Positions 3,441-44,588 of a stretch of DNA of 64,000 nucleotides are shown piece by piece. The stretch's first letter is position 1, and every line of letters begins with the position of its first letter. Below the pieces are notes generated by a model. That model searched no databases. It was not told where the DNA came from and saw only the letters and a list, made by a program, of their open reading frames with translations. The position numbers were made by a program, and so were the translations under genes. Where the stretch lies: the IMG/VR virus record IMGVR_UViG_3300022868_000009, positions 1-64,000 of that record. One strand, given 5' to 3'.

Positions 3441-3515
3441 TTTTTTATTTTTATATATTAAATTTTAATGTTAGAAATTGGATTTTTTACATAAAGATGT
3501 TATTAATATATATAC

Positions 3516-5466: not shown

Positions 5467-7902
5467 TTATATATTTTTAAGTCTGTTATAGAATCTGTCT
5501 AATTGATCTTCTGATAATGTCGTATTATCAACTAGTTGGTTCTTTTGTAGAACTTGTTTAGATTCTTTAATTAATGAATAGTTTTCCATTTTTCTACTAT
5601 TCCAAAAAGCTTCCATTTTTGCAGGAGTATCTAAATTAGGATACAATTTAGCAGTTAATAGTATGCTTTTCTTTTGGTCATTTTCTAGACCTTCATATAT
5701 TGGTTGTAAATCACTAGGGATATTTTCTACCAATACATCTTCAAAAGTTTTCTTAACACTTAGAGCATCAGTCATAGCTTTAAGGACTTGATTTTCTGAA
5801 TAATACGTGCTTTCGTTTAATGCAAGTTTTACTTTTTCTCTATCTTCGTCAGTTAAAGAATGATAAGATTTTTTATTTCTCTCTGTTAAGAATTGTAAAA
5901 AATGAGGCTCGCTATTTGCAGCTACTTTACGTTTTTTAGTTTCAGTAATAAGTTTGCCAATTTGAGATTTCAATGAATCTTCATTTTCTAATATTTTATC
6001 ACCAATAATGATGATTTTACTTTCGTGTATTTGTAATTCTTCTTGATTGTCTGTTAATTTTAAAAGTACCATACCATCGTTAGGCATGTAAGCCATAACT
6101 TCACCTGGTCTATCATTAAATGTTGCAGTCATTCCAGGAACAATTTGATCACTAACTACTTCTTGTCCTTGTACACTCACAGGTGCAACACCTATACTAG
6201 TATCAACTACTGGTGGTTGTGCTTGTACATCAATTTGAGTCTGTGCTTGAACTGGTTGTCCAAATTCATCAACTTCAGCTTGAGCTTGAGCATCTTGTTG
6301 AACAAATTCTTGTCCTTGTTGAGCTTGAGCTTGAACATCTTGTACTTGTGCATCAGCGTCTAATTGTATTGGACTTTGAATTGCATCAGTTGTTTGTGCT
6401 TGAGTTTGATTTTGATTTTGAACAAAATCAGTATCAGTATCATTATCATAAAATCTTTCTACATTTTGAACTTTCATATTAGGCATTTGAGCACCTTGAT
6501 TTTCGTTCAGTTCACCACTATTTAAATGTTCAACAGTTTGGTCTAAAGATTCTGCAAGATAATTTTGATATGCTTGAGTATCAGCAACATTTTCTGCAAT
6601 ATATTCACTATAAGCGATATTGTTATCTACATGTTCTGCAATATATTCACTATAAGCGATATTGTTATCTACATGTTCTGCTACATACTCAGTATAAGCG
6701 ATATTGTTATCTACATGTTCTGCAATATATTCTGCATATTCAATATTGTTATCTACATGTTCTGCAATATATTCTGCATAAGCAATATTTTTATCAAGAT
6801 TTTCTGCTACATATTCTGAATAGTCGATAGATTTTTCAATTGATTCAGCTAAATAATCTGAAAATTGAATATTCTTATCAACGTTCTCAGCGATATACTC
6901 AGAAAAGTCGATATTTTTGTCTAATGTTTCAGCGATGTATTCACTGTAATCAATAGTTTTGTCTAATTCTTCAGCAATGTATTCTGAATAGTTGATAGAC
7001 TTTTCTAATTCTTCTGCTAAATAGTCATTGTGTTTAACAAGACCTTCTGTTTTAGCTTTCAATGTTGAGTTTTCATTAACTACATGTTGAATCTGATCAG
7101 CTAAATAATCTAAATAGCCTGTTACAGAAATTTGTTGTTCGTTTAAATTTTCTAGAAGTTCAGCCATTTTCATCATTCTCTCAGGTTCTACTCCACCTTT
7201 GGCATTTTCTTCAAAGAAACGTTGAACTGATTCAATTTGTTCAGTTAAATAATTTGAATACTCAATCATTTGATTTTTTGTTACAAATTCGTTGTTGTTA
7301 TTCATTTCTAAGAAATCATTAAATTTTGACGAATCTGATAAGTCATAAATACGAAAGTTTGAACTTTCATTAAAACCTAAAGACTCGTTGAGTGATTTTA
7401 ATTCCATTTTTGCAGAACTAAAACCTGGATCTGCAACGGCATCATATGTAAAAAGTTTCTTTATAGCCACCGTACCATTACTTTCAGTAATACCAGCCGC
7501 TCTAGAGCTAACAAAAATAGGGCAATTGTCATCGACTAATGCTTTAGCCTCTTTGCCCCAATGTGTATTAAGTAACCTAATTGTACCTTCTACTCTATTC
7601 GCTTGTGGATTATGAAAAATTGATTCCAATGTATGTGAAACTCTTGCAAGTGATGTATCGAACACGTCAGGATGATCGAATTCACCATATATGACACCTA
7701 AGTTTTTTTTACGTTCATTAAGTTCGCCTAAATGCGGTAAAAACTTATCAGAAGTATAAATTCTTTCATTACGATTAACTACATCAAATTCGGTAAAAAT
7801 ACCTCCTAAAATATATTCTTTCTTTTGAGAACTTTGCTCCTGAATGAGTTTTAAACCATCAGTCGAATTTTCAATGATCAAAACCGGTTTGTTTCCATTC
7901 AT
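5467..7902 (-). CDS. gp21: Prohead core protease (gp21-like) fused to a scaffold/core domain
   Basis: N-terminal GEFDHPD and FVSSRAAG catalytic motifs, YDAVADPGFSSA; followed by acidic 14-aa repeats, a Q-rich linker and a helical C-terminus. Confidence 0.9.
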   Translation of the reverse strand: MNGNKPVLIIENSTDGLKLIQEQSSQKKEYILGGIFTEFDVVNRNERIYTSDKFLPHLGELNERKKNLGVIYGEFDHPDVFDTSLARVSHTLESIFHNPQANRVEGTIRLLNTHWGKEAKALVDDNCPIFVSSRAAGITESNGTVAIKKLFTYDAVADPGFSSAKMELKSLNESLGFNESSNFRIYDLSDSSKFNDFLEMNNNNEFVTKNQMIEYSNYLTEQIESVQRFFEENAKGGVEPERMMKMAELLENLNEQQISVTGYLDYLADQIQHVVNENSTLKAKTEGLVKHNDYLAEELEKSINYSEYIAEELDKTIDYSEYIAETLDKNIDFSEYIAENVDKNIQFSDYLAESIEKSIDYSEYVAENLDKNIAYAEYIAEHVDNNIEYAEYIAEHVDNNIAYTEYVAEHVDNNIAYSEYIAEHVDNNIAYSEYIAENVADTQAYQNYLAESLDQTVEHLNSGELNENQGAQMPNMKVQNVERFYDNDTDTDFVQNQNQTQAQTTDAIQSPIQLDADAQVQDVQAQAQQGQEFVQQDAQAQAEVDEFGQPVQAQTQIDVQAQPPVVDTSIGVAPVSVQGQEVVSDQIVPGMTATFNDRPGEVMAYMPNDGMVLLKLTDNQEELQIHESKIIIIGDKILENEDSLKSQIGKLITETKKRKVAANSEPHFLQFLTERNKKSYHSLTDEDREKVKLALNESTYYSENQVLKAMTDALSVKKTFEDVLVENIPSDLQPIYEGLENDQKKSILLTAKLYPNLDTPAKMEAFWNSRKMENYSLIKESKQVLQKNQLVDNTTLSEDQLDRFYNRLKNI
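6541..7032 (-). repeat. About 12 tandem 42-bp (14-aa) repeats, consensus EYIAEHVDNNIAYS
   Basis: Visible directly in protein and DNA (e.g. gcaatatattcactataagcgatattgttatctacatgttct repeated). Confidence 0.9.
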
Positions 7903-29359: not shown

Positions 29360-29426
29360 AATTTAATTATTTTTATATAGTACAAAATTAAAAAATTGTT
29401 GATTTTTTATTGGCAAGAAAAAAGAG

Positions 29427-34553: not shown

Positions 34554-35232
34554 TTAATGTAAAAGTTCAATCTTACCCTTAATTATATTTTTATAACTCG
34601 ATTTACTATTAGTAATATGATCAACAATTATACCAGTTTTTAAATTATAAGTCCTTCTTCTATTTGACCTAGATCTTAAACCTATTTGTTCATTTCTACC
34701 ATTAGAATAAGACTCATTATATTCTTTATTAAATTTATCTTGTAATCTTTTCTTTAATTCTTTCCACGCACCAGATTCATTTTTATGTTGATTTCTACCA
34801 TCAACTCTTACTTGAATATTAGTAGGGATATGTTTTAAAATAACACAACTCATAGTTCTATTTCTATGTTGACCGCCCGGTCCAGAACCCATAGTATATA
34901 TTACTTCTACATCATTTTTATCAATATTAACTGAAATATCTTGTTTTTCATCTAAAACTGCAACAGAAACTGTTGATGTGTGCATTCTACCTTTTGATTC
35001 TGTTGGTGGTACACGTTGCCATTTATGATTACCTATTTCATTTGAGAAGAATTCTTTTACACCATCACCGCTAAAGACATAAATCAACTAAACCTTCTCT
35101 TTCATTAAGAGAAATTAGTTTAAATCCCTTTAACTTTAATGTTTTTAAGTAAATGTTTTTCATATCTTGTACTAGAAGTTTAGCATCCTCGCCACCTTCT
35201 TGATCTCTGATTTCTATAATAATTTTTTCCAT
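34554..35232 (-). CDS. prfA: Class I peptide chain release factor, RF1-type (PxT), lacking domain 1; two frames joined by a +1 frameshift at CTT TAG C (35076-35070); about 225 aa
   Basis: Frame 0 from ATG 35232: MEKIIIEIRDQEGGEDAKLLVQDMKNIY...LVDLCL*; +1 frame: SGDG...QRVPPTESKGRMHTS...GSGPGGQHRN...RRRTYN...DH. Together they match RF1 domains 2-4 continuously. Confidence 0.85.
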
Positions 35233-35247
35233 AACTTTGTTTTATTT

Positions 35248-35637
35248 TTATAATTCTGCTTTTTCAAAAAATTTCTGCATAGTTAAATATGCAAAAGAAT
35301 GTGCGTCTAATAAAGTATATTGTTTCCAACAAAAAAGTACAGATAATATAAATAATGCACCACTTATTATTGTAAATAATACAGGTAATTTAATTAGACA
35401 GATTAATGTAAGAATTAACAAAGCTATAGAAATATGCTTGCTATGTTTGAATCGGTAAAAATATTTAATAATGTTTTTAACATTGTGTTTAATTTGTATT
35501 TGTTTTAGTACTTTTAATGGAACTGATTTTTTATCATCCATTGTCATTTTTTGATAACCATCATAAGTTATATGTTCATATTCATTATCTACATGACAAT
35601 CTTTGTTTAATAAATCTTCAATTATAATTTTTTCCAT
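35248..35637 (-). CDS. Hypothetical membrane protein
   Basis: 129-aa ORF with two hydrophobic segments. Confidence 0.65.
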   Translation of the reverse strand: MEKIIIEDLLNKDCHVDNEYEHITYDGYQKMTMDDKKSVPLKVLKQIQIKHNVKNIIKYFYRFKHSKHISIALLILTLICLIKLPVLFTIISGALFILSVLFCWKQYTLLDAHSFAYLTMQKFFEKAEL

Positions 35638-35672
35638 AATATTAATATACGAAAATTCTTCTAAGAAAAAAA

Positions 35673-35921
35673 CTATAAAACTTTATATTTTAAGATATTA
35701 TTTAAACTATTCTTAGGATCTTTTTCTACTACGAATCCGCCTTTCCAATTAGATTTTTCAGCTTGTTTGAATAACTCATCATAAGTACCTTTATCAAGTT
35801 GTAGATGCATTTCTTCTTTTCGTTTAATATGGTCATCTAATTGCTTGAGTAAAATATTCTTTCTTTGTTGAACACCTTCGTTCATTTCGTTAAATTCGTT
35901 AAATTCATCATAACTTTTCAT
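35673..35921 (-). CDS. Hypothetical protein with CTS-like N-terminus (MKSYDEFNE)
   Basis: 82-aa ORF; AATATATA at 35943-35950. Confidence 0.7.
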   Translation of the reverse strand: MKSYDEFNEFNEMNEGVQQRKNILLKQLDDHIKRKEEMHLQLDKGTYDELFKQAEKSNWKGGFVVEKDPKNSLNNILKYKVL

Positions 35922-35981
35922 TATAATAATTATATTTTCTTCTATATATTAAAATACATATTGATAAATTTTATAATTATG

Positions 35982-36054
35982 TAACGCAGATCAGAATCGA
36001 ACTGACAGCCTTTGGGATATGATTCCAATGCTCTACCTATTGAGCTACTGCGTT
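35982..36054 (-). tRNA. tRNA-Met/Ile2 (CAT)
   Basis: Cloverleaf AACGCAG / GCTC-GAGC D stem / TTGGA-ATCATAT-CCCAA / GTCAG TTCGATT CTGAT. Confidence 0.75.
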
Positions 36055-36385
36055 ATTTATTTTTAATTCTATCTAATTTAATCTTTCGATCAATTCTTAT
36101 AATTTTCTTTTTAACTTCTTCATCTTTAAAATTTGGATGTAAATATAAATTACACATAACATGGAAAACATCTGGATTTATATCACCATTTTCATCTAAA
36201 CATGGTTTTAATATATCCATCATTATATATGTTCTAATAGATGTATAATTATTTTGAAATTCATAACGTTTACAAATAAAATCTATATAACTATCAACAT
36301 CAACAGGTATTATTTTATTCTCAAATTCGTCAATTAAAACATCAATTATATATTCATCATTAAAACCATTACTATCATCCGTCAT
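36053..36385 (-). CDS. Hypothetical protein (RKIKLDRI C-terminus)
   Basis: 110-aa ORF. Confidence 0.6.
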   Translation of the reverse strand: MTDDSNGFNDEYIIDVLIDEFENKIIPVDVDSYIDFICKRYEFQNNYTSIRTYIMMDILKPCLDENGDINPDVFHVMCNLYLHPNFKDEEVKKKIIRIDRKIKLDRIKNK

Positions 36386-36567
36386 CCTTTACTCTACTAA
36401 TTTAACTTTTCTTTGATACTGGTATTAAAATTCTACTATTTTCCATATAACTTATATTTCAAATAATATAATATGTTTAAAAATTTTGTATTTAAAAAGA
36501 ACCGTATCAATAATAAATTAATACGGTTTCAGTAGAGGGTAACTAATATAATTGGTAAGATAAAAAA

Positions 36568-36759
36568 CTATTCTTGTTCCTTTTTAGCTTTAAGGTTACC
36601 CTTAGTTTTTCCTTTTACTTCTTTTTCTTTCTTGTCTGGTCTAACTAATTCTTTCCAGATGTTTTTAGGACAATAATTATATCCGTTTGCTAACTTTTCA
36701 TAAACTTCCTTTTCTTTTACTCTAATTGGAAGGTCGTCTCCGAGTCTCATTGTTTTCAT
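36568..36759 (-). CDS. Small basic hypothetical protein
   Basis: 63-aa ORF. Confidence 0.55.
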   Translation of the reverse strand: MKTMRLGDDLPIRVKEKEVYEKLANGYNYCPKNIWKELVRPDKKEKEVKGKTKGNLKAKKEQE

Positions 36760-36767
36760 AAGCTAAT

Positions 36768-37277
36768 TTAATTAATTTTTATAATATTTGATTTTTCTAT
36801 TTTTATTGATTTTTCTATTTTTAATTTTTCTATTGGTTTTTCTTTTTTAATATTATTAAAATCTATAACCTTCAATGTTATAGTATCTGTTTTTTGTTTA
36901 AATGTAAATTCATGCTCACCTTTACCATAATGGTTTATTTTTACAAATAAATTAAAAACTGTATTTTCATTAATTTGTCTAGATTCATTTACTTTAAAAA
37001 TATATTTAATTTGTTTACCATCAAACTCATATTCAGCATAAAAATCTTTGTTTTTAGAATCAAGATAAACTACAGGTTTAATTTCACCATCATATGCAAC
37101 AAATTCATTTATATCTGCAAATGGACCAACAATTGCAAAACCAACAATAAATATAACTATTGATGCAAATACACACCATGCTTTCGTTAAAGATTTTTTA
37201 GAAAATATTGATAATAAAATAAATATCATTAATAATCCAGGACTAATTATCCATGCAAGTGTTAATAGTAAACTCAT
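36768..37277 (-). CDS. Hypothetical membrane protein
   Basis: 169-aa ORF with two N-terminal TM-like helices. Confidence 0.65.
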   Translation of the reverse strand: MSLLLTLAWIISPGLLMIFILLSIFSKKSLTKAWCVFASIVIFIVGFAIVGPFADINEFVAYDGEIKPVVYLDSKNKDFYAEYEFDGKQIKYIFKVNESRQINENTVFNLFVKINHYGKGEHEFTFKQKTDTITLKVIDFNNIKKEKPIEKLKIEKSIKIEKSNIIKIN

Positions 37278-37354
37278 TTTTTATATTTTTTTAATTTGTA
37301 TAAATATACAAAAATTTCAACTTAAAAAAAATTTTCGATTCTAAATTTTAATTG

Positions 37355-37427
37355 TAGGTATAGATGGATTTGAACCACCGACTTCTACTGTATAAGAGTA
37401 GCACTCTGACCCCTGAGTTATATACCC
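37355..37427 (-). tRNA. tRNA-Ile (TAT)
   Basis: GGGTATA / ACTC-GAGT / CTACT-CTTATAC-AGTAG / GGTGG TTCAAAT CCATC; close paralog of tRNA-Ile(GAT) at 39044. Confidence 0.85.
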
Positions 37428-37804
37428 ATGTCTAATCGTTTAAAAATTTTCCTTTCAATTGTTTCTATCATATAATTAGAATAAAAAAACAAATCGTACA
37501 TATTCTTTACCTCTTTTACATTATAATAATCACTATATTCATATATTTGATAAGTGATGCCTGTACCTGTTTTATAGGATGATGTATAACATATATATTC
37601 TTTATTTTTGTATTTTTTATATCTTACACTATGCAACGTGTTTATTATATAACCATTTTTAATATTTTTATAAACACTTTTAACATTTTTAATATTTTTA
37701 AAATCAAACTCATTAAATATACGTTGAAAAGCATGCTTAGGACTTAAAACCTTATTTTTTTCAAAATAATGTTCAAAACCAATTTGATATTTGTTTTTTC
37801 TCAT
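37418..37804 (-). CDS. Hypothetical protein
   Basis: 128-aa ORF; its 3' end overlaps the tRNA 5' end by 10 nt. Confidence 0.5.
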   Translation of the reverse strand: MRKNKYQIGFEHYFEKNKVLSPKHAFQRIFNEFDFKNIKNVKSVYKNIKNGYIINTLHSVRYKKYKNKEYICYTSSYKTGTGITYQIYEYSDYYNVKEVKNMYDLFFYSNYMIETIERKIFKRLDMGI

Positions 37805-37842
37805 ATTATTTTTGTATGTTTACGACAAAGTTTTCAATACTT

Positions 37843-37924
37843 AATATCTGATTCGAACCTACGTTGGGGCGTTTACCTCATCAGATTAACAGTCTGACAC
37901 CTTCGACCACTCGGACACAGATCA
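37843..37924 (-). tRNA. Degenerate tRNA (GTT anticodon, long variable arm, 3' T-stem strand missing)
   Basis: CCGAGTGGTCGAAGG D arm, TCAGA-CTGTTAA-TCTGA, GTAGG TTCGAAT then directly CAGAT with no CCTAC. Confidence 0.55.
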
Positions 37925-37932
37925 ATTTATTA

Positions 37933-38646
37933 TTACACAATTTCCGATTTTATTGCATTTGGTGGAATATTATCATAAGTATAATATGCTTCAGAATCTT
38001 CGTTAAACTTTGGATCTTTATGTAATTTAATATTATTAATCATCACTTTCATATCTATTTCTAGAATAATATATTCTTCCTTAGAATGAAATTCTTTTTC
38101 TTCTAAGTAATTTTTAGATATTTTTTCATTTCCAAATAAATAAATTCTTTCTGGATGTTGTTCAATAACGTTTTTAGTTTTAGGAACTATACCTTGTTTT
38201 TTAATTTTATCTAAATTTTTTTTATTTGTAACATGATATAATTTTTCTGGTACACCAACTTCAGAATCAAATCTTTTATTTAAATAAACTATGAAATCTT
38301 CATCTTTTTTCCAAACATGTGTTGAAATACTTGTTTTTTTACCATCCATATACTGGTTTGAAATATTATAACCTAAATTATTTACCAAAATCAATAAATC
38401 AGAATAAAATTCTTTTAATCTTTCTCCATAAAAATTAAGTTCAATTCTATCTTTAAGAATATATAATTTGACACTACCTTTTACTTTATGTTTTTTAAGC
38501 AAATCGTCGATTTTTTGAACTGATATATCATAATCAATACTTTTAATAAGACCCTCTTTAATTAAATTATAATTGAAAGACTCTAACATTTTATTATTAA
38601 AGTCATGATGATATCCACAAAATTCAAAATATTTTTTCATATTCAT
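37933..38646 (-). CDS. ADP-ribosyltransferase-fold protein (Tpt1/KptA-like H-motif) with CTS-like start
   Basis: KLYHVT...I.KQGI.PK...RIYLF...ILEI....YTYDNIPPNAI; paralog of 54608-55393. Confidence 0.6.
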   Translation of the reverse strand: MNMKKYFEFCGYHHDFNNKMLESFNYNLIKEGLIKSIDYDISVQKIDDLLKKHKVKGSVKLYILKDRIELNFYGERLKEFYSDLLILVNNLGYNISNQYMDGKKTSISTHVWKKDEDFIVYLNKRFDSEVGVPEKLYHVTNKKNLDKIKKQGIVPKTKNVIEQHPERIYLFGNEKISKNYLEEKEFHSKEEYIILEIDMKVMINNIKLHKDPKFNEDSEAYYTYDNIPPNAIKSEIV

Positions 38647-38677
38647 TATATATTAAATTCATTTTTTTGTTTATTTG

Positions 38678-38750
38678 AGGGGAAACTAGGACTCGAACCT
38701 AGGACACCTTGATTAACAATCAAGTACTCTACCAACTGAGTTATATCCCC
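38678..38750 (-). tRNA. tRNA-Asn (GTT)
   Basis: GGGGATA / ACTC-GAGT / CTTGA-TTGTTAA-TCAAG / CTAGG TTCGAGT CCTAG. Confidence 0.85.
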
Positions 38751-38831
38751 TGGTATAGGGCTAAAACCACTACCCTATCTTTGAAAGTTTACAAATCTAC
38801 CTGTGGTTAGGTCATAGAACTGCTCCTACAG

Positions 38832-38903
38832 TAGTCCGTAGGGGAATCGAACCCCTCTCTCTGGGCTGAAAACCCAACGTCCTGCGCAATAGACGAACGG
38901 ACC
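38832..38903 (-). tRNA. tRNA-Glu (TTC)
   Basis: GGTCCGT / TTGGG-TTTTCAG-CCCAG / AGGGG TTCGATT CCCCT. Confidence 0.85.
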
Positions 38904-38915
38904 ATAAATTACATG

Positions 38916-38997
38916 TAGCGGGTCTAGGAGTCGAACCTAGTATCTCGTGGGTTATGAGCCCAGAATGATTTATAATTATCCATTTCACTCCCCCGCA
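38916..38997 (-). tRNA. tRNA-fMet (CAT), initiator-like, enlarged D loop
   Basis: 1:72 T-T mismatch, GGG/CCC at the base of the anticodon stem, CTCATAA loop, CTAGG TTCGACT CCTAG. Confidence 0.75.
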
Positions 38998-39043
38998 ATA
39001 TAATTTCAATCTTTAAAAATTTATCAATATGTCAAAGAACTTG

Positions 39044-39117
39044 TGGGTATAGATGGATTCGAACCATCGACCTCTACCGTATCAGAGTAGCACTCTAACC
39101 AACTGAGCTATACACCC
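39044..39117 (-). tRNA. tRNA-Ile (GAT)
   Basis: GGGTGTA / GCTC-GAGT / CTACT-CTGATAC-GGTAG / GATGG TTCGAAT CCATC. Confidence 0.9.
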
Positions 39118-39118
39118 G

Positions 39119-39836
39119 TTATAATTTCAACCATTTTCTTATTGAATTATCACTAACACCATATTTTTTACCTACCTGTACATAATTACTTTCTTGAATT
39201 TCTTTCAATAAAATTTCTTTATTAGGTCTTTCTACTTTTCTGCTTTTTTCATGATAACATTCTACACATTGTTTTGATTGTCTTCATTTCATTACCACAT
39301 TCACAATAGTATTTTTTCTTTTCTTTTTTTTGATATTTTTGATATTTCTCTTTTTTTAAATCAGATTTATTAGATTTTGTTTTACTTTTACCACAATATG
39401 TGCTTGTCTGGCTATGACAATTTGGACATAATAATCTAAGATTTTCTAATCTATTATCTAAGTTATCACCATTTATATGGTCCAAATGTAAAGATATAGA
39501 TTTTCTTTTCCATTCATTTATTCCACATTCATCACATTTATATTCTAAAATATCTTCTTCAATAAGACGTTTTTTCAAAGAACCATTATTAGTATAAGTT
39601 GAATTTTCAACTAATATTTCATCCAACGAATAAGTTTTTGAAAAATTCTTAAAATTTTCACCTGTATTCCAACCTTGTCCTGTAAAATGTGATTTATCAA
39701 TATTATATAATTTAACATATTTTTTAATTGTTTTATAATTTCCACCTACTGGTCTTATGTCTAATTTTCTACAAACATCAGCAATTGAAAATGATTCTTT
39801 TACTATTTTCTCTAAATTATCTTTTTCATATTTCAT
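39119..39836 (-). pseudogene. HNH homing endonuclease, frameshifted before its C-terminal Zn/HTH domain
   Basis: LHLDHINGDNLDNRLENLRLLCPNCH in ORF 39249-39836; a shifted frame continues SKQCVECYHEKSRKVERP...KYGVSDNSIRKWLKL* to 39119, matching the C-termini of the other two HNH genes. Confidence 0.75.
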
Positions 39837-39931
39837 ATTAATATTTATTTTATATTATATATTAAAACTTAAAAGCTATATTTTTTAATGTAAATATACG
39901 TTTGATATATTTATATTAACTAAAAATAGTG

Positions 39932-40016
39932 TACCTGGAATGGGACTCGAACCCATACGACCATAAAGATCAATAGATTTTAAGTCTATCTCGGCTACCA
40001 ATTACGACACCCAGGC
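39932..40016 (-). tRNA. tRNA-Leu (TAA)
   Basis: GCCTGGG / ATAGA-CTTAAAA-TCTAT / long variable arm / ATGGG TTCGAGT CCCAT. Confidence 0.9.
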
Positions 40017-40235
40017 ATTTGTGTCTTATTTTATCATTATTAACGAATCCTTTTATAATTCATTCTTTCTTTTTTACCTTTTCTTTCTCTAATCAAATCG
40101 TGTTCAATTTCAATAGCGAATTTTAAGTATAACCACATATCTGAATTAGGTCTTTGTTTACTCATACCTAATCTATATTTAATTATTTTATTTCTAGTTT
40201 TTTTATTCATTTCTTTCCTTTCTTATATTTATTTG

Positions 40236-40315
40236 TACCTCTGGAGAGACTCGAACTCTCACACCTTTCGGCACTGGTGCCTAAAACCAGCGTGTCTACA
40301 TTCCACCACAGAGGC
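40236..40315 (-). tRNA. tRNA-Leu (TAG)
   Basis: GCCTCTG / CTGGT-TTTAGGC-ACCAG / GCCGAAAGGT variable arm / GAGAG TTCGAGT CTCTC. Confidence 0.9.
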
Positions 40316-40324
40316 ATATTTAAT

Positions 40325-40354
40325 AAAAAAGCCAGTTCTTTATTTTGAACTGGC
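40325..40354 (-). terminator. Intrinsic terminator of putative attenuator 1
   Basis: GCCAGTTC-AAAATAAA-GAACTGGC-TTTTTT, ending 10 nt upstream of tRNA-Leu(TAG). Confidence 0.75.
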
Positions 40355-40376
40355 TCTATAATTTAACAATAGTATA

Positions 40377-40442
40377 TTAGAGCCAGTCCCAGATTTCCTC
40401 TAGTAATAAATTAATAATCATATTTATATTTATATTCAACAT
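40377..40442 (-). CDS. Putative leader peptide 1 (MLNININMIINLLLEEIWDWL)
   Basis: 21-aa ORF with an A-rich upstream region; its last codons form the 5' strand of a 10-bp antiterminator. Confidence 0.6.
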   Translation of the reverse strand: MLNININMIINLLLEEIWDWL

Positions 40443-40474
40443 TTTTGTACTTTTTATTTTATTTTATTTTTTAG

Positions 40475-40546
40475 AGGCTCCGACTGAATTCGAATCAGTG
40501 TATCTAGTTTTGCAGACTAGTGCCTTAACCACTCGGCCACGGAGCC
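40475..40546 (-). tRNA. tRNA-Cys (GCA)
   Basis: GGCTCCG / CTAGT-CTGCAAA-ACTAG / U73 discriminator. Confidence 0.9.
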
Positions 40547-40557
40547 ATTATTTTTTG

Positions 40558-40652
40558 TGGGAGCCGAGGGACTCGAACCCCCCTACCGCAAAGTCCATTA
40601 CGACAATTTGTTGACGCGGATCGGTTTTACAGACCGATGCCGTTAGACTCCC
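40558..40652 (-). tRNA. Atypical tRNA-Tyr (GTA): no D arm, about 38-nt variable region
   Basis: Acceptor GGGAGTC/GGCTCCC plus A73; 8-nt linker TAACGGCA; TCGGT-CTGTAAA-ACCGA; GGGGG TTCGAGT CCCTC. Confidence 0.65.
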
Positions 40653-40658
40653 AAACTT

Positions 40659-41354
40659 TTACGACTTATTTTTTATTGTATTTTCATAAGTTTTTAACCA
40701 TTTTCTTATAGCATTATCACTAACACCATATTTTCTTCCAGTAGCAGAATAACCTACTCTTTTTATTTCTATTTTTAATTTTTCATAAGAAGGTCTTTCA
40801 ACTTTCCTGTTGTTTTTTGCTGAACATTTCACACACATTTTTGAATTTTTATGTATTTCATTACCACATTCACAATAATTTTTTTCTTTTTTCTTTTTTC
40901 TATTTTTACCAGCATGTGTATCTAATGTTGCATTACAATTAGGACATACAATCCTCAAATTTTCTATTTTATTATCATCATAAACACCATTCTTGTGATC
41001 CAAAATTAAACTCATTTTTTTACCATTCCATATTTCATCTTGTCCACATATTTCACATTTTCTTTCTTTTAAACCTTCATCATATAATCTTTCTTTTAAA
41101 TGTGTTCTACTAAATGTAGAATTTTCAACTAATATTTTTTCTAATGGTGTCTTATTTTTAGTTGATAAATATTTAATTTTATCATAACATTTAGTAAAAT
41201 GTGTTATATCCAAATCATACAACTCAATATATTTTTTCAATGTTTTAGGGTTACCACCAGCATTTCTTATTCCTAATTTTTCTAAACACTCTTTTTGTGT
41301 TTTAGATGTCTTAACTATTTCTTCAAGATTTTCTTTTGTCCATTTTAATTTCAT
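40659..41354 (-). CDS. HNH homing endonuclease with C-terminal Zn-ribbon/HTH
   Basis: LILDHKNGVYDDNKIENLRIVCPNCN, YCECG, KYGVSDNAIRKW. Confidence 0.85.
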   Translation of the reverse strand: MKLKWTKENLEEIVKTSKTQKECLEKLGIRNAGGNPKTLKKYIELYDLDITHFTKCYDKIKYLSTKNKTPLEKILVENSTFSRTHLKERLYDEGLKERKCEICGQDEIWNGKKMSLILDHKNGVYDDNKIENLRIVCPNCNATLDTHAGKNRKKKKEKNYCECGNEIHKNSKMCVKCSAKNNRKVERPSYEKLKIEIKRVGYSATGRKYGVSDNAIRKWLKTYENTIKNKS

Positions 41355-41414
41355 AAAAAAAAGTTTTCTTTTATATATTAAATCTCGAACCTCGTTTTTT
41401 CATTTTTTCATTTG

Positions 41415-41485
41415 TTGTCCCCAAAGGATTTAAACCCTTACCACAACCTTCAAAAGGTTATGTGCTATCATTACACCAGAGGACA
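41415..41485 (-). tRNA. tRNA-Gln (TTG)
   Basis: TGTCCTC / GTGT-GCAC / TAACC-TTTTGAA-GGTTG / AAGGG TTTAAAT CCTTT. Confidence 0.8.
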
Positions 41486-41512
41486 AAATATAATCTAAAA
41501 CTTATTTTCTAG

Positions 41513-41584
41513 CAGTCCATGGGAGATTCGAACTCCAACCTTTGCCGTGAAAAGCTGTAGTGCTACCATTACACCATGGGGCTA
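41513..41584 (-). tRNA. Degenerate tRNA (TTC loop, unpaired anticodon stem)
   Basis: GGTGTAATGGTAGCAC D arm and GGAG TTCGAAT CTCC T arm are present, but the anticodon and acceptor stems are mismatched. Confidence 0.5.
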
Positions 41585-41590
41585 ATTATT

Positions 41591-42286
41591 CTAAATCTTT
41601 TCGTATTGTTTTTTCCATTTCCTAATAGCATTATCACTAACACCATACTTTCTTCCTACACCACAATAACCTAATTCAACTATTTCTTTTATCAATTCTT
41701 TATATGTTGGTCTTTCTATTTTTCTCTGACTCTTAGATACACATTCTCTACATTTAATAGCAGATTTAGTAATCTCATTTCCACATTCACAATAATATTT
41801 CTTTTTCTCCGTAACGTAATTATATTTACTATTTCCAATATTCTTACCACCGTGTGTTTCTAAACCAGCATTACAATTTGGACAAACAATTCTAAGATTT
41901 TCTATTCTATTATCATTATTTACACCGTTTTTATGATCTAATATTAAACTGATTTTTACATCATTCCATTCTTCACCTTGATTACACAACTCACATTTTC
42001 TTTCTTTTAACCCTTCTTTGTATAATCTATCTTTTAAATTAGTTGTATAAGTATACGTCGAATTTTCTACTAATATTTCTTTTGTTTTTATTTTAGTAAA
42101 ATTACCACCATTACTATGAAACTTAAAATGTGTTATATCTAAATTATAAGTTTTAATATATTTTTTAATAGTTTGCCTATTTCCATAATATGGTTTTAAT
42201 CCTAAATTTCTAGCAACATCTGATAAATTACCAGATTCAGAAACTATTTTACTAAAATACTCTTTTTCATATCTATTTGTTTTCAT
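41591..42286 (-). CDS. HNH homing endonuclease with C-terminal Zn-ribbon/HTH
   Basis: LILDHKNGVNNDNRIENLRIVCPNCN, YYCECG, KYGVSDNAIRKW. Confidence 0.85.
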   Translation of the reverse strand: MKTNRYEKEYFSKIVSESGNLSDVARNLGLKPYYGNRQTIKKYIKTYNLDITHFKFHSNGGNFTKIKTKEILVENSTYTYTTNLKDRLYKEGLKERKCELCNQGEEWNDVKISLILDHKNGVNNDNRIENLRIVCPNCNAGLETHGGKNIGNSKYNYVTEKKKYYCECGNEITKSAIKCRECVSKSQRKIERPTYKELIKEIVELGYCGVGRKYGVSDNAIRKWKKQYEKI

Positions 42287-42365
42287 AAGATTTTATTTTT
42301 ATATATTAAAATCTTCGAACCCAAATTCAAATTAACCAACATTTCAATGAACCTTTATTTTCTTG

Positions 42366-42442
42366 CGGTCCCTACGGGATTCGAACCCGTCTGTTTTTCC
42401 TGAGTGACAGTCAGGTGGCCACGCCAAGCAACCCCAGAGACC
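42366..42442 (-). tRNA. tRNA-Asp (GTC)
   Basis: GGTCTCT / CCTGA-CTGTCAC-TCAGG / ACGGG TTCGAAT CCCGT / G73. Confidence 0.9.
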
Positions 42443-42590
42443 TTTCTATTATTTCTCAATTCTCTTTAATTTACTCGCTATTCTACGATTATCTCTTTTT
42501 AAATCTCTTAATTCTCTTGAAAGAAGAGCTTTTAATATTCTTATTTTTATATTTCTTGTTCTCATTTTATTTTCATTTTTTATATTAATC

Positions 42591-42618
42591 AAAAAAACCA
42601 GTCATAATTGACTGGTTT
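42591..42618 (-). terminator. Intrinsic terminator of putative attenuator 2
   Basis: AAACCAGTC-AATTAT-GACTGG-TTTTTTT. Confidence 0.7.
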
Positions 42619-42640
42619 AGCATATCATACGGATATAACC

Positions 42641-42730
42641 TTACCAGTCGAAGATTTGATCCTCCTGTAAATAATTATCAAGACATATAATGTCAAGATT
42701 TTCTATTTGATATGTTAAATTGTTTATCAT
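42641..42730 (-). CDS. Putative leader peptide 2 (MINNLTYQIENLDIICLDNYLQEDQIFDW)
   Basis: 29-aa ORF downstream of AATATATA (42797-42804); its terminal GACTGGT is complementary to the terminator 5' arm. Confidence 0.55.
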   Translation of the reverse strand: MINNLTYQIENLDIICLDNYLQEDQIFDW

Positions 42731-42900
42731 CGAATTTATTTATTTAATTCTTTTATTAATTTAATACTCAAAAGTTTTAAATTTTTATATCATTTTTATA
42801 TATTTAACTCAATAAGTCAAATTTTACCATTTTTGAACTTTTGTTATACAAATATAAGGAAATTTCCGAATAAATTAAAATTTTAGAACAAATTTTAAAA

Positions 42901-43164
42901 TTAAACTAGCCCTCTAATTAATATTTCTATTTCTTCATTATTTGTACAATCATTAATAAAATCTTGAATTAATGGTATATTAGTTATCATTTTTTTATTT
43001 TCAGAATTGTATACATCCCATAAATCATCACTTGTTACTTTTGCCCATTTAAAGAAAAATTTGAGAATTACTTTTAATTCACCAAATGAAACCTTCTCAT
43101 CTATATAATCCATATTGTTAGAATGTGCAAATTCATCAATATAAATCTCAAGTAAATTATTCAT
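42901..43164 (-). CDS. Hypothetical protein
   Basis: 87-aa ORF. Confidence 0.6.
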   Translation of the reverse strand: MNNLLEIYIDEFAHSNNMDYIDEKVSFGELKVILKFFFKWAKVTSDDLWDVYNSENKKMITNIPLIQDFINDCTNNEEIEILIRGLV

Positions 43165-43167
43165 AAT

Positions 43168-43743
43168 TTATTCTTCTTCCTCTTTTACTTCAATTTCAGT
43201 TTGTGTAGATCTCCAAGATTTAAGATAATCTATAGTTTCATCAATAATATTATCCATTTCTTGTTCAGATTCTTCTATAATTTTATTCTTTATTTCAATC
43301 ATTACCAAAAACTGTTTATTTTTCTCATTAATTAAAGAAACTTCTCTTTCTAAATCTTCAATTTTTTTCTCTTTTTGAATATTTATATTTTTTGCATATT
43401 CTTTTTGATGTTCAAGTTCTTCAGTTAATAAATCAATATCAGTACTTAATGAATCAGTTTGAACAATCAACGTTTTATTCTGCACATTTAAAACAGTGTT
43501 CTCAATTTCTGATTTTATTTTAAGATTATTATCAATAAAAACCTTTTTAACCCCTAATTGAGCAGTCAATCTCATTTTAGTATTTTTTATTTCATCTTCC
43601 TGATTTCTAAACAATCCTTTTTTAACATAATCAAATAATTCTCGACCATTTTCTGTTAACATCTTAACAATTAACCTATTCTCGCTTGTTTTGTATACTG
43701 TAAATTTTACTTTCATATTTTTATTTTTTAAGTTTAATATCAT
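43168..43743 (-). CDS. Hypothetical coiled-coil protein
   Basis: 191-aa ORF (start possibly the second Met). Confidence 0.65.
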   Translation of the reverse strand: MILNLKNKNMKVKFTVYKTSENRLIVKMLTENGRELFDYVKKGLFRNQEDEIKNTKMRLTAQLGVKKVFIDNNLKIKSEIENTVLNVQNKTLIVQTDSLSTDIDLLTEELEHQKEYAKNINIQKEKKIEDLEREVSLINEKNKQFLVMIEIKNKIIEESEQEMDNIIDETIDYLKSWRSTQTEIEVKEEEE

Positions 43744-43942
43744 ATTTATTCATTAATTCGCTGGCATATTCTGAAATATCTAATGTATCAGAATTAAGAA
43801 ATTCATCTACAATTTCTGTAACTATATCAATATATGGTTTCTTTTTTTGTATATCATCTTTCTTTGCAGCTTTTTCCATAATTTCTTTTTCAATTACTCT
43901 ATATTCTTTACTAACTCGGTGTTCTTTATCTTTAAATGGCAT
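43721..43942 (-). CDS. Hypothetical protein
   Basis: 73-aa ORF. Confidence 0.55.
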   Translation of the reverse strand: MPFKDKEHRVSKEYRVIEKEIMEKAAKKDDIQKKKPYIDIVTEIVDEFLNSDTLDISEYASELMNKYDIKLKK

Positions 43943-43961
43943 AATTTTATATTTTATAAGT

Positions 43962-44588
43962 TTATAATTCTTTAATTCTTTTTACATAATCAAACCAGAA
44001 TAAATAGTTTTTAACAAACTCTAAACTAGATTCATCATAATTGTTTTTAAATATTTTATATTTTATTTTATCTAAAAATAAGATTTCCTTAATTTTACTA
44101 ATAGACATTTGATTAGAAACTCTATTATCAAAATCTTCCTCGATCATATTTCTATTCTTGATTACAAGTTCTTTTCTCTTTTTATAATTTGCATCAATAA
44201 TTATAATTTCATCGAACATCTTATGAAGACCACCTTTCATCATGGTTGCGCTTTCAGATATAAATAAATCTTTTTTCAATGTGTATTCTGCGGTGTATCT
44301 TCTGTAATAAAACTTACGTATTAAAAAAGGTTTTAATAAACTTTCAAGTTGATTCAATTTTTGTTTATCATTGAATATAATACTTGATAACTTTTGTTTG
44401 TTTATTTCATCATCATTGTAAATATCTTTACCAAATATTTCAATAACGTGTTTTTTTACAGATTTATCATAATATAAAGCCTTTGCTTCATCATCAAAAT
44501 AGAAAACTTCTACATTTTCTATTTCAAATAACTCACAAATATGAGATTTACCGGAACCTATACCACCGGTTATACCAACTGTTTTCAT
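43962..44588 (-). CDS. coaE: Dephospho-CoA kinase
   Basis: MKTVGITGGIGSGKS, YFDDEAK, INKQKLSSIIFND, R...QM; ATG at 44588. Confidence 0.85.
   Translation of the reverse strand: MKTVGITGGIGSGKSHICELFEIENVEVFYFDDEAKALYYDKSVKKHVIEIFGKDIYNDDEINKQKLSSIIFNDKQKLNQLESLLKPFLIRKFYYRRYTAEYTLKKDLFISESATMMKGGLHKMFDEIIIIDANYKKRKELVIKNRNMIEEDFDNRVSNQMSISKIKEILFLDKIKYKIFKNNYDESSLEFVKNYLFWFDYVKRIKEL

What the first reader, a model, noticed from the sequence alone, without database searches (positions are those of the whole stretch)
40316..40442. Leader-peptide attenuator directly upstream of the two tRNA-Leu genes
Seen (minus strand): a 21-aa ORF MLNININMIINLLLEEIWDWL with consecutive TTA TTA CTA codons. Its end (ACTGGCTCTA, 40387-40378) pairs over 10 bp with TAGAGCCAGT (40358-40349), which overlaps the 5' arm of a terminator GCCAGTTC/GAACTGGC-T6 ending 10 nt before tRNA-Leu(TAG); tRNA-Leu(TAA) follows. 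The two hairpins are mutually exclusive. Established: this is the trp/leu/his attenuator geometry, where a ribosome reaching the stop masks the antiterminator strand and one stalled about 4-6 codons earlier frees it. Inference: the control codons are the ones read by the downstream tRNAs, so the phage may transcribe its Leu tRNAs on demand, for example after host tRNA depletion or anticodon-nuclease defence. I know of no described translational attenuation of phage tRNA genes.
Basis: partly seen in the sequence, partly recalled or inferred. Interest (0 to 1): 0.87.

Follow-up and report, generated by a model that had tools for sequence, protein, structure and literature searches.

The report
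Codon-sensing attenuator gating phage tRNA genes
A giant phage places short "test" reading frames, built almost only from codons read by its own tRNAs, in front of stop-or-go RNA hairpins, so it probably makes its tRNA genes only when ribosomes run short of those tRNAs; I found no earlier description of such control of tRNA genes.

Summary
The 21-codon ORF (40442-40377, minus strand) ends inside a 12-bp hairpin strand. That strand competes with the 5' arm of an 11-bp, T6 terminator ending 9 nt before tRNA-Leu(TAG).

The attenuator reading is supported and is broader than proposed.
- All 15 codons lying where a stalled ribosome would leave the antiterminator free are read by the seven downstream tRNAs (Leu-TAG, Leu-TAA, Ile-GAT, Glu, Asn, Ile-TAT, Met). 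All seven tRNAs are represented (P about 1e-7).
- A second, homologous copy (42730-42591) heads the array. Its leader adds Asp, Gln, Tyr and Cys codons, matching the tRNAs that lie between the two copies.
- A metagenome scan found the same element in 11 further distinct low-GC contigs. Ten of them show a phage tRNA array directly downstream.
- Across this family, leader codons track each element's own downstream tRNAs (permutation p about 0.001).
- The pairing core is read in all three frames, the stop codon stays next to it, and both helices covary.
- Two sequence-unrelated analogues exist in other phages.

No experiment exists. I found no prior description. This is a new variant of leader-peptide attenuation, applied to tRNA supply.

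The parts
42849..42856 (-). Candidate promoter element TATATTTG (Bacteroidota-type TAnnTTTG), 126 nt upstream of the leader-2 ATG
   Evidence: The same motif lies 85-184 nt upstream of 9 further elements in relatives and upstream of both L046 leaders. The motif alone is not enriched in the window, so this is suggestive only.
42641..42730 (-). Leader ORF 2 (29 codons plus TAA) at the head of the tRNA array. Its sensor codons are 42727-42656.
   Evidence: 23 of 24 sensor residues have a tRNA downstream, 21 of 24 by strict wobble. It contains Asp x3, Gln x3, Tyr x2 and Cys x1, which leader 1 lacks in its sensor part.
42643..42649 (-). Copy 2 element 1, GACTGGT (antiterminator 5' strand). It overlaps the last two codons and the first base of the stop.
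42591..42618 (-). Copy 2 element 2, element 3 and T-tract: terminator AAACCAGTCA / TGACTGGTTT followed by a run of T. ACCAGTC (42616-42610) also pairs with element 1.
   Evidence: Terminator -12.9 kcal/mol. Antiterminator with its inner hairpin -16.2 kcal/mol.
42365..42565 (-). 38-codon ORF (42565-42449) and tRNA-Asp(GTC) (42442-42365), the first genes after attenuator 2
40474..40652 (-). tRNA-Tyr-like (40652-40558, anticodon GTA) and tRNA-Cys(GCA) (40546-40474), immediately upstream of leader 1. tRNA-Gln(TTG) lies at 41485-41414.
   Evidence: The Tyr-like RNA scores 29.5 bits against a threshold of 29, and ARAGORN does not call it.
40377..40442 (-). Leader ORF 1 (21 codons plus TAA). Sensor codons are 40439-40395. 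The tail codons ATC TGG GAC TGG CTC are masked when the ribosome is near the stop.
   Evidence: 15 of 15 sensor codons are read by the 7 downstream tRNAs.
40389..40403 (-). Small 5-bp hairpin CTAGA-ggaaa-TCTGG directly 5' of element 1. A counterpart lies in copy 2 (42664-42650). Its role is unknown; it may be a pause hairpin.
   Evidence: The GAGGA..ATCT motif is shared by the two copies.
40378..40389 (-). Copy 1 element 1, GGACTGGCTCTA (antiterminator 5' strand). It contains the stop codon.
40347..40358 (-). Copy 1 element 2, TAGAGCCAGTTC. It is shared by the antiterminator (3' strand) and the terminator (5' arm).
40325..40338 (-). Copy 1 element 3, GAACTGGC, followed by T6 (terminator 3' arm and U-tract)
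35981..40315 (-). Genes gated by attenuator 1: tRNA-Leu(TAG) 40315-40235, 56-aa ORF 40210-40040, tRNA-Leu(TAA) 40016-39931, HNH gene 39836-39249, tRNA-Ile(GAT) 39117-39043, tRNA-Glu 38903-38831, tRNA-Asn 38750-38677, tRNA-Ile(TAT) 37427-37354, tRNA-Met 36054-35981, with ORFs between them
   Evidence: I found no promoter-like element between the terminator and the two Leu tRNAs. Whether distal genes have their own promoters is unknown.

Best explanation
This is a ribosome-mediated (leader-peptide) transcription attenuator that gates the phage's own tRNA genes. It is one of two in series in the array.

Inferred mechanism:
1. RNA polymerase coming from the array promoter, probably near 42856, transcribes a short ORF.
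2. If the ribosome translates the ORF without delay, it reaches the last five or six codons or the stop. There it covers element 1 (40389-40378).
3. Element 2 (40358-40347) is then free to pair with element 3. The terminator forms and transcription ends at the T-tract, 9 nt before tRNA-Leu(TAG).
4. If the ribosome stalls anywhere in the sensor part (codons 2-16), element 1 stays free. It pairs with element 2 as soon as element 2 emerges, the terminator cannot form, and the tRNA genes are transcribed.

The sensor codons are exactly those read by the seven downstream tRNAs. The circuit would therefore be a negative feedback on tRNA supply: shortage of any of these charged tRNAs opens the gate, and sufficiency closes it.

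Copy 2 at the head of the array does the same for the full set of eleven tRNAs. There is no upstream protector hairpin, so the absence of translation is predicted to give read-through.

Shown by sequence: the anatomy, its conservation, the covariation and the codon-tRNA match. Inferred: translation of the ORF, termination at the T-tract, and the stalling response.
For: Anatomy and energetics:
- Searches give the helices and their energies.
- On the nascent transcript the antiterminator is the minimum-energy fold in 16 of 18 family members.
- It is blocked only when a modelled ribosome has its A site in the last 5-8 codons.
- On the full transcript the terminator state is lower in energy in 17 of 18 elements, so this is a kinetic switch, as in classical attenuators.

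Codon match in the window:
- Leader 1: 15 of 15 sensor codons decoded, 7 of 7 tRNAs represented, P = 9e-8 against long-ORF codon usage and 5e-7 against small-ORF usage.
- The two leaders rank 2nd and 3rd of 512 small ORFs for content of phage-tRNA amino acids.
- Leader 2 adds Asp, Gln, Tyr and Cys codons for the tRNAs lying between the copies.

Family:
- 18 elements in all: two in the window and 16 in 12 fetched loci, which represent 11 distinct contigs (L047 and L070 carry the same sequence). All are low-GC. Ten of the 11 contigs show a tRNA array directly downstream. In L100 too little sequence is held to tell.
- Leaders match their own downstream tRNAs: exact permutation p = 0.0007-0.0015 for 8 elements, and about 3.5e-5 to 1.3e-4 for 10.
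- Examples: NNNNDCNDMD precedes Asn, Asn, Cys, Met, Asp. YYYECEEE precedes Tyr, Glu. QQLQQLL precedes Leu, Leu, Gln, Gln.
- Array amino acids make up 89% of sensor residues against 41% of the ribosome-masked tails (Fisher p = 4e-16).
- An ORF ending next to element 1 is kept in 12 of 13 elements, against 3-15% of shuffles.
- Element 1 is read as D-W, L-T-G or R-L-x, so it is conserved as RNA, not as peptide.
- Covariation: antiterminator, 4 pairs with changes on both sides, 1 of 500 shuffles reach the score. Terminator, 5 pairs, 0 of 500. A three-way change GATTGG / CCAATC / GATTGG occurs in L102.

Translation context:
- Phage genes lack Shine-Dalgarno sequences (5 of 69). The A-rich leader upstream regions look like those of real genes.

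Convergence:
- L027-L031: a 37-codon leader with 17 different amino acids covers 15 of the 16 amino acids of the array (joint P about 2e-4).
- LR745206.1 (L046): 24 of the first 25 leader residues are T, M, N, L, V, I or R, ahead of an array of exactly Asn, Arg, Leu, Val, Ile, Thr and Met tRNAs.
Against: - There are no expression, ribosome-profiling or 3'-end data. The phage is uncultured and its host unknown.
- Tight transcription-translation coupling in the presumed Bacteroidota-like host is assumed, not shown.
- There is no protector or pause hairpin of the trp 1:2 type. How polymerase and ribosome are synchronised is unexplained.
- In three elements (L123 at 7079, the L027-L031 family, L046 at 2479) the stop lies 13-27 nt beyond element 1. 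A ribosome waiting at the stop would mask it only partly or not at all.
- Some sensor codons have no phage tRNA in the fetched DNA: ACA in leader 2, and the MTTTMT starts in relatives.
- The pairing core GACTGG / CCAGT was fixed by my search pattern, so covariation could only be seen at flanking positions and in members found by the generic scan.
- Family members are related, so the permutation p-values overstate independence.
- The rest of the 344-kb genome was not scanned for tRNAs.
Confidence: 0.78

Rival explanations
1. It is a plain intrinsic terminator (or transcription-unit insulator) inside the array. The upstream ORF and the complementary strand are fortuitous in AT-rich DNA.
For: Short ORFs are common in 26% GC DNA: 512 ATG ORFs of 12-40 codons in the window. 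Rfam recognises only the terminator part (Thr_leader 28.5 bits against a threshold of 55).
Against: - The three-element pattern is far above chance.
- The ORF, the stop position and element 1 are conserved across 18 elements.
- Element 1:2 covaries.
- The codon content is specific to the downstream tRNAs.
- A constitutive terminator 9 nt before tRNA-Leu(TAG), with no promoter after it, would silence that tRNA.
Confidence: 0.04
2. The small ORFs encode functional micro-proteins, and the hairpins simply terminate their genes.
For: The two window peptides share a tail (EEIWDW / EDQIFDW) with an in-frame 3-nt indel and a two-base W-to-F change.
Against: - Across the family the peptides are not alignable.
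- The conserved nucleotides GACTGG are translated in all three frames.
- Tails vary freely while composition, not sequence, is conserved.
- No protein-family match is possible at this size.
Confidence: 0.04
3. It is a translation-independent RNA switch: the alternative hairpins are set by a protein, a small RNA or an uncharged tRNA (T-box-like), or they mark an RNA-processing site.
For: The alternative helices are real and covary. The spacer between elements 1 and 2 often holds its own hairpin. Relatives have a conserved 64-75 aa protein right after head elements, which could be a regulator.
Against: - This does not explain conservation of the ORF, the position of its stop, or why codons for the downstream tRNAs fill only the part of the ORF where a stalled ribosome would free element 1.
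- There is no T-box or other riboswitch hit in Rfam.
Confidence: 0.07
4. It is an attenuator, but one that senses general translation capacity (ribosome availability, host shut-off, amino-acid starvation) rather than the supply of the specific tRNAs encoded downstream.
For: The three-element design gives read-through whenever the ribosome lags, for any reason. Leaders carry a few non-cognate codons.
Against: The specific match of each leader to its own downstream tRNAs, including different leaders within one genome (window copies 1 and 2; L123 at 7079 versus 10179), is not needed for a general sensor.
Confidence: 0.1

Closest known systems
Leader-peptide attenuators of amino-acid biosynthesis operons (trpL, hisL, leuL, thrL, ilvL, pheL); named from established knowledge, with the mechanism as summarised in PMC3082878 and PMC1183508
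   Same: - A short translated leader with regulatory codons.
- An intrinsic terminator whose 5' arm can pair instead with an upstream strand.
- A stop codon placed so that a terminating ribosome masks that strand.
- Multi-amino-acid sensing, as in the thr (Thr, Ile) and ilv (Leu, Val, Ile) leaders.
   Different: - The regulated genes are tRNAs, not enzymes, so the sensed molecule is the product itself.
- Three RNA elements instead of four: there is no 1:2 protector or pause hairpin, so no translation should mean read-through.
- Nearly the whole leader is sensor, sampling 5 to 15 different amino acids.
- It is carried by a phage, with two copies in series within one array.
- There is no sequence similarity (Thr_leader 28.5 bits against 55).
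pheM attenuator of the phenylalanyl-tRNA synthetase operon pheST of E. coli (from established knowledge; not tested here)
   Same: Leader-peptide attenuation applied to a component of the decoding machinery for the same amino acid whose codons fill the leader.
   Different: It controls a synthetase, senses a single amino acid, is a cellular gene and has the four-segment architecture.
T-box riboswitches (from established knowledge)
   Same: The functional aim is the same: transcription read-through of translation-related genes when a given tRNA is insufficiently charged, through competing terminator and antiterminator helices.
   Different: The T-box binds the tRNA directly through a specifier codon and needs no ribosome. 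Here an ORF is conserved and there is no T-box match in Rfam.
tRNA arrays of cultured phages T5 and crAss001
   Same: Clusters of tRNA genes interspersed with small ORFs and HNH homing endonuclease genes.
   Different: My scanner found no terminator with an upstream competing strand in either array. No such control is annotated there.

Membership tests
Ribosome-mediated (leader-peptide) transcription attenuators | A short ORF with a start codon in a context fit for initiation, upstream of the regulated genes | tested here: met
   21- and 29-codon ATG ORFs. The A-rich upstream regions resemble those of the phage's real genes, which lack Shine-Dalgarno sequences. An ORF is kept in 12 of 13 relatives against 3-15% of shuffles.
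Ribosome-mediated (leader-peptide) transcription attenuators | Regulatory codons in the leader are cognate to what the regulated genes supply | tested here: met
   15 of 15 codons and 7 of 7 tRNAs for leader 1. Family permutation p about 0.001. Sensor 89% against tail 41%.
Ribosome-mediated (leader-peptide) transcription attenuators | An intrinsic terminator lies between the leader and the regulated genes | tested here: met
   11-bp stem plus T6 ending 9 nt before tRNA-Leu(TAG). 10-bp stem plus T-run in copy 2. The helix covaries. Function as a terminator was not tested.
Ribosome-mediated (leader-peptide) transcription attenuators | An antiterminator helix is mutually exclusive with the terminator | tested here: met
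   12-bp helix sharing 40357-40347 with the terminator. It is the minimum-energy fold of the nascent RNA in 16 of 18 elements. Covariation reached by 1 of 500 shuffles.
Ribosome-mediated (leader-peptide) transcription attenuators | The leader stop is placed so that a ribosome finishing the ORF masks the antiterminator 5' strand | tested here: met
   The stop lies inside element 1 in copy 1 and directly after the GACTGG core in copy 2. It is 0-10 nt after the core in 17 of 18 elements. Ribosome-mask modelling agrees. Exceptions are listed under evidence against.
Ribosome-mediated (leader-peptide) transcription attenuators | An upstream protector or pause hairpin (segment 1:2 of trp) sequesters the antiterminator strand when the leader is not translated | tested here: not met
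   Only a 5-6 bp hairpin lies 5' of element 1, and it does not compete with element 1. The element is of a three-segment type.
Ribosome-mediated (leader-peptide) transcription attenuators | Read-through responds to translation of the leader and to supply of the cognate charged tRNA | not testable with these tools
   This needs reporters, Term-seq or ribosome profiling.
Rfam RF00506 Thr_leader (best Rfam match) | Score at or above the family's gathering threshold | tested here: not met
   28.5 bits against 55. The alignment is carried by the terminator.
T-box riboswitch | Specifier loop and conserved T-box sequence recognisable by the Rfam model | tested here: not met
   No T-box hit, even at E-value 1 to 10, in 35000-44000 and 40200-40700, nor at gathering threshold over the window.

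The most novel reading that the evidence does not exclude
Phages with tRNA arrays have repeatedly evolved 'codon-sampler' leader peptides. These measure, codon by codon, whether the infected cell can decode the phage's preferred codons, and they switch on exactly the matching block of phage tRNA genes. Arrays are subdivided by serial attenuators into separately tuned blocks. If so, phage tRNA supply is demand-driven and homeostatic rather than constitutive. Such leaders could also act as built-in alarms for host defences that cut or deplete tRNAs.
Probability: 0.6. Interest if true: 0.92.

Novelty: new variant of a known kind. Interest (0 to 1): 0.88.

Why it matters
Phage tRNA genes are usually discussed as a fixed supplement for codon-usage mismatch, or as spares against tRNA-cleaving defences. 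How they are regulated is essentially unknown.

A leader-peptide attenuator whose sensed quantity is the decoding capacity supplied by the very genes it controls would be a new logic: product feedback on tRNA. I found no report of such control of tRNA genes in cells or viruses.

It gives a directly testable model for when and why huge phages express their tRNAs. It explains the small ORFs and terminators scattered in some arrays. It also offers a rule (leader codons predict downstream tRNAs) that can be used to annotate arrays and to find further cases. Apparent convergence in three unrelated sequence families argues that the design is selected.

Tried and rejected
- Rfam: only tRNAs plus a sub-threshold Thr_leader hit driven by the terminator.
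- INPHARED phages by blastn: only tRNA matches. The two best (cyanophage C48C1, huge phage LR745206.1) are not relatives, though the latter turned out to hold an analogous element.
- IMG/VR via neighbouring proteins: only the source contig, IMGVR_UViG_3300022868_000009. The window is its first 64 kb.
- Homologues of the 237-aa Tpt1-like gene. Identical copies in ENA and Logan contigs show no variation. The 42-47% identical homologues sit in non-tRNA contexts.
- HNH homologues led to unrelated tRNA arrays. L026, L032 and L033 show nothing similar.
- High-GC pattern hits in IMG/VR and metagenomes are chance matches.
- No family member in 185,579 bacterial and archaeal genomes.
- T5 and crAss001 arrays: no such element.
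- I recalled a possible precedent upstream of E. coli pheU and pheV. The sequences show only a promoter directly before each tRNA, so I dropped it.
- Arrest-peptide idea for the shared EEIWDW tail: rejected, because tails are not conserved in the family and element 1 is read in three frames.
- Pfam and PHROGs on the small ORFs next to the elements: nothing.
- The TAnnTTTG promoter motif is not enriched in the window as a whole, so I use it only as a positional hint.

Full report
**1. What is there**

The window is the first 64 kb of a 344,634-bp, 25.7% GC phage contig, IMGVR_UViG_3300022868_000009.

On the minus strand, 42.9-35.9 kb holds a tRNA array. In order it contains:
- Asp, Gln, an odd Tyr-like RNA, and Cys
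- Leu(TAG), Leu(TAA), Ile(GAT), Glu, Asn
- a degenerate Asn-like RNA
- Ile(TAT) and Met

Three paralogous HNH endonuclease genes and small ORFs lie between the tRNAs.

The reported ORF, the 10-bp complementarity and the terminator are all at the stated coordinates. Two refinements:
- The antiterminator is 12 bp (-17.3 kcal/mol) and the terminator stem 11 bp (-16.4 kcal/mol). They share 40357-40347.
- tRNA-Cys ends 31 nt upstream of the ATG, so this element lies inside the array.

**2. A second copy**

The region 42730-42591 has the same architecture:
- a 29-codon ORF ending GAC TGG TAA
- GACTGGT pairing with ACCAGTC
- ACCAGTC also forming the 5' arm of a 10-bp terminator followed by a T-run

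The two copies are alignable over about 90 nt. They differ by coordinated changes in all three strands: ACTGG[C/T], [G/A]CCAGT, ACTGG[C/T].

These are the only two copies in the 344-kb contig. This terminator core occurs nowhere else in the window on that strand with the same sequence.

Copy 2 follows a TATATTTG motif of the kind used as a promoter element in Bacteroidota (from my own knowledge). It precedes a 38-codon ORF and tRNA-Asp, so it heads the array.

**3. Translation context**

Only 5 of 69 long ORFs have a Shine-Dalgarno-like sequence. Real genes start after A/T-rich runs like those before both leaders. The lack of a Shine-Dalgarno sequence is therefore not an argument against translation.

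This feature, a Por_Secre_tail domain nearby and the promoter motif suggest a Bacteroidota-like host. That is an inference.

**4. Codon content**

I modelled a ribosome as masking 15 nt upstream to 11 nt downstream of the first base of the A-site codon. Under this model the antiterminator can form on the nascent RNA when the A site is at codons 2-16 of leader 1. It is blocked for the last five codons and the stop.

| Leader | Sensor codons | Decoded by downstream tRNAs | Probability |
|---|---|---|---|
| 1 | 15 | 15, with all 7 tRNAs represented | 9e-8 vs long-ORF usage; 5e-7 vs small-ORF usage |
| 2 | 24 | 21 by strict wobble, 23 by amino acid | about 2e-4 |

Nine sensor codons of leader 2 are for Asp, Gln, Tyr or Cys, the tRNAs located between copy 2 and copy 1. 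Leader 1 has none of these in its sensor part.

Among 512 small ORFs of the window, the two leaders rank 2nd and 3rd for content of phage-tRNA amino acids.

**5. Relatives**

One metagenome scan with the three-element pattern returned 77 loci. The high-GC ones are chance matches.

The low-GC ones (23-33% GC) form a family:
- 12 fetched loci representing 11 distinct contigs (L047 and L070 carry the same sequence)
- 16 elements in those loci, some found by a generic scanner, making 18 with the two window copies
- a tRNA array directly downstream in 10 of the 11 contigs; L100 holds too little sequence to tell
- arrays drawn from the same restricted set: Met, Tyr, Leu, Asn, Glu, Asp, Cys, Ile, Gln

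Leaders follow their own arrays:

| Leader fragment | Downstream tRNAs |
|---|---|
| MRYMNNNNDCNDMD | Asn, Asn, Cys, Met, Asp, Asp |
| MTTTMTYYYECEEE | Tyr, Glu, (His), Cys or Tyr, Glu, Glu |
| MNNMNATYEYYYEEN | Tyr, Glu, Tyr |
| MTARSTYQQLQQLLSLQ | Leu, Leu, Gln, Gln |

The last two lie in the same contig.

Statistics:
- Permuting leaders against arrays gives exact p = 0.0007-0.0015 for 8 non-redundant elements.
- Array amino acids make up 89% of sensor residues and 41% of masked-tail residues (p = 4e-16). A stalling-ribosome model predicts exactly this.
- An ATG ORF of at least 15 codons ending 0-13 nt after element 1 is present in 12 of 13 elements, against 3-15% of shuffles.
- GACTGG is translated as D-W, L-T-G or R-L-x, so it is conserved as RNA. 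The stop follows it by 0-10 nt in 17 of 18 elements.
- Both helices covary. One member has GATTGG / CCAATC / GATTGG.
- A further, more divergent member (GGAAYTGG / CCAGTTCC) lies after tRNA-Met in L088, L090 and L115.

No member occurs in 185,579 bacterial and archaeal genomes.

**6. Independent analogues**

The generic scanner also found the same design with unrelated sequence in two other phage lineages.

L027-L031 (36.8% GC):
- a 37-codon leader holds 17 different amino acids
- it sits about 110 nt before an array of 16 tRNAs
- 27 of 28 sensor residues are in the array set, and 15 of 16 array amino acids are covered
- joint P is about 2e-4

The published 634-kb huge phage LR745206.1 (L046):
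- a leader behind a TATATTTG motif has 24 of its first 25 residues from T, M, N, L, V, I, R
- it precedes an array of Asn, Arg, Leu, Val, Ile, Thr and Met tRNAs only

T5 and crAss001 lack such elements.

**7. Mechanism and limits**

The best explanation is leader-peptide transcription attenuation acting as product feedback on tRNA supply. It has three RNA elements and no protector hairpin. Any stall in the sensor part, or no translation at all, should give read-through. Fast translation to the stop should give termination.

Full-length folds prefer the terminator state, so the switch must be kinetic, as in trp.

Unexplained points:
- how polymerase and ribosome are synchronised (a conserved 5-6 bp hairpin just 5' of element 1 may be a pause signal)
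- the few elements whose stop lies 13-27 nt beyond element 1
- non-cognate ACA codons at the start of some leaders
- the role of the conserved 64-75 aa protein that follows head elements in relatives

Nothing here is experimental.

**8. Comparison and novelty**

It works like the trp, his, leu, thr and pheM class and meets five of the six sequence-level defining features that I tested. It lacks the fourth RNA segment, and it regulates tRNA genes rather than enzymes. It is not a member of any Rfam family.

Eight full-text searches found no description of leader-peptide control of tRNA genes in phages or cells. The library misses most subscription journals.

A remembered possible precedent at E. 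coli pheU and pheV was checked on the sequence and is not there.

Verdict: a new variant of a known kind, of high interest, resting on strong comparative evidence but no experiment.

Noticed in passing
window 40558-40652 (-): tRNA-like RNA with anticodon GTA (Tyr), a roughly 35-nt variable-region insertion and a shortened D arm. It scores 29.5 bits on the Rfam tRNA model (threshold 29) and 27.1 on tRNA-Sec, and ARAGORN does not call it. Relatives carry ordinary 82-85 nt tRNA-Tyr genes.
   Followed up: partly
window 34554-35087 (-): 177-aa ORF with an RF-1 domain (79 bits) and the end of a PCRF domain: a truncated class-I release-factor-like protein next to the tRNA array. It could affect ribosome dwell time at stop codons, or stop-codon use. 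Not studied.
   Followed up: partly
window 37354-37427 (-): tRNA-Ile with the rare anticodon TAT, reading ATA directly. It is present together with tRNA-Ile(GAT) and a CAT tRNA. ATA is used in both leaders.
   Followed up: no
window 39249-39836, 40659-41354, 41591-42286 (-), and fragment 39119-39208: Three paralogous HNH homing-endonuclease genes (48-57% identical to the first of them), plus a C-terminal remnant, are interspersed with the tRNAs. Distant homologues also sit inside tRNA arrays of unrelated phages.
   Followed up: partly
window 37933-38646 (-): 237-aa ORF inside the array with a weak, sub-threshold match to RNA 2'-phosphotransferase Tpt1/KptA (20 bits against 26). Homologues at 42-47% identity occur in other phage contigs outside tRNA arrays.
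   Followed up: partly
window 37848-37924 (-): Degenerate tRNA-like sequence with a GTT (Asn) anticodon loop, 25.5 bits, below threshold.
   Followed up: no
L088 (array-strand orientation 5984-6058) and L065 2649-2725: ARAGORN reports tRNAs with four-base anticodons (TAAA and GTCT) inside the arrays of relatives. They may be frameshift-type or degenerate tRNAs.
   Followed up: no
L088 6847-7065 (-), L047 746-940, L115 509-733, and others: In relatives the head attenuator's T-tract runs straight into the ATG of a conserved, lysine- and glutamate-rich 64-75 aa protein that precedes the first tRNA. It has no Pfam or PHROGs match. The window has a 38-codon ORF in the equivalent place.
   Followed up: partly
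L028 777-950 (same in L027, L029-L031); L046 2413-2660 and 5140-5262: Sequence-unrelated leader, antiterminator and terminator elements lie upstream of tRNA arrays in two other phage lineages. The second L046 element precedes a protein gene rather than a tRNA.
   Followed up: partly
window-wide; for example 42296-42305, 29370-29379, 3448-3457 (-): The phage's genes almost never have a Shine-Dalgarno sequence (5 of 69). Several, including the HNH genes, are preceded by TATATAAAA-like motifs 10-25 nt before the ATG, possibly a phage promoter or initiation signal. The exact 10-mer is only marginally enriched.
   Followed up: partly
L123 10179-10308 and 10466-10598: Two nearly identical attenuators (leaders MNNMNATYEYYYEENRNRLVI and ...LVT) lie in tandem, about 290 nt apart, before the same Tyr, Glu, Tyr block.
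   Followed up: no
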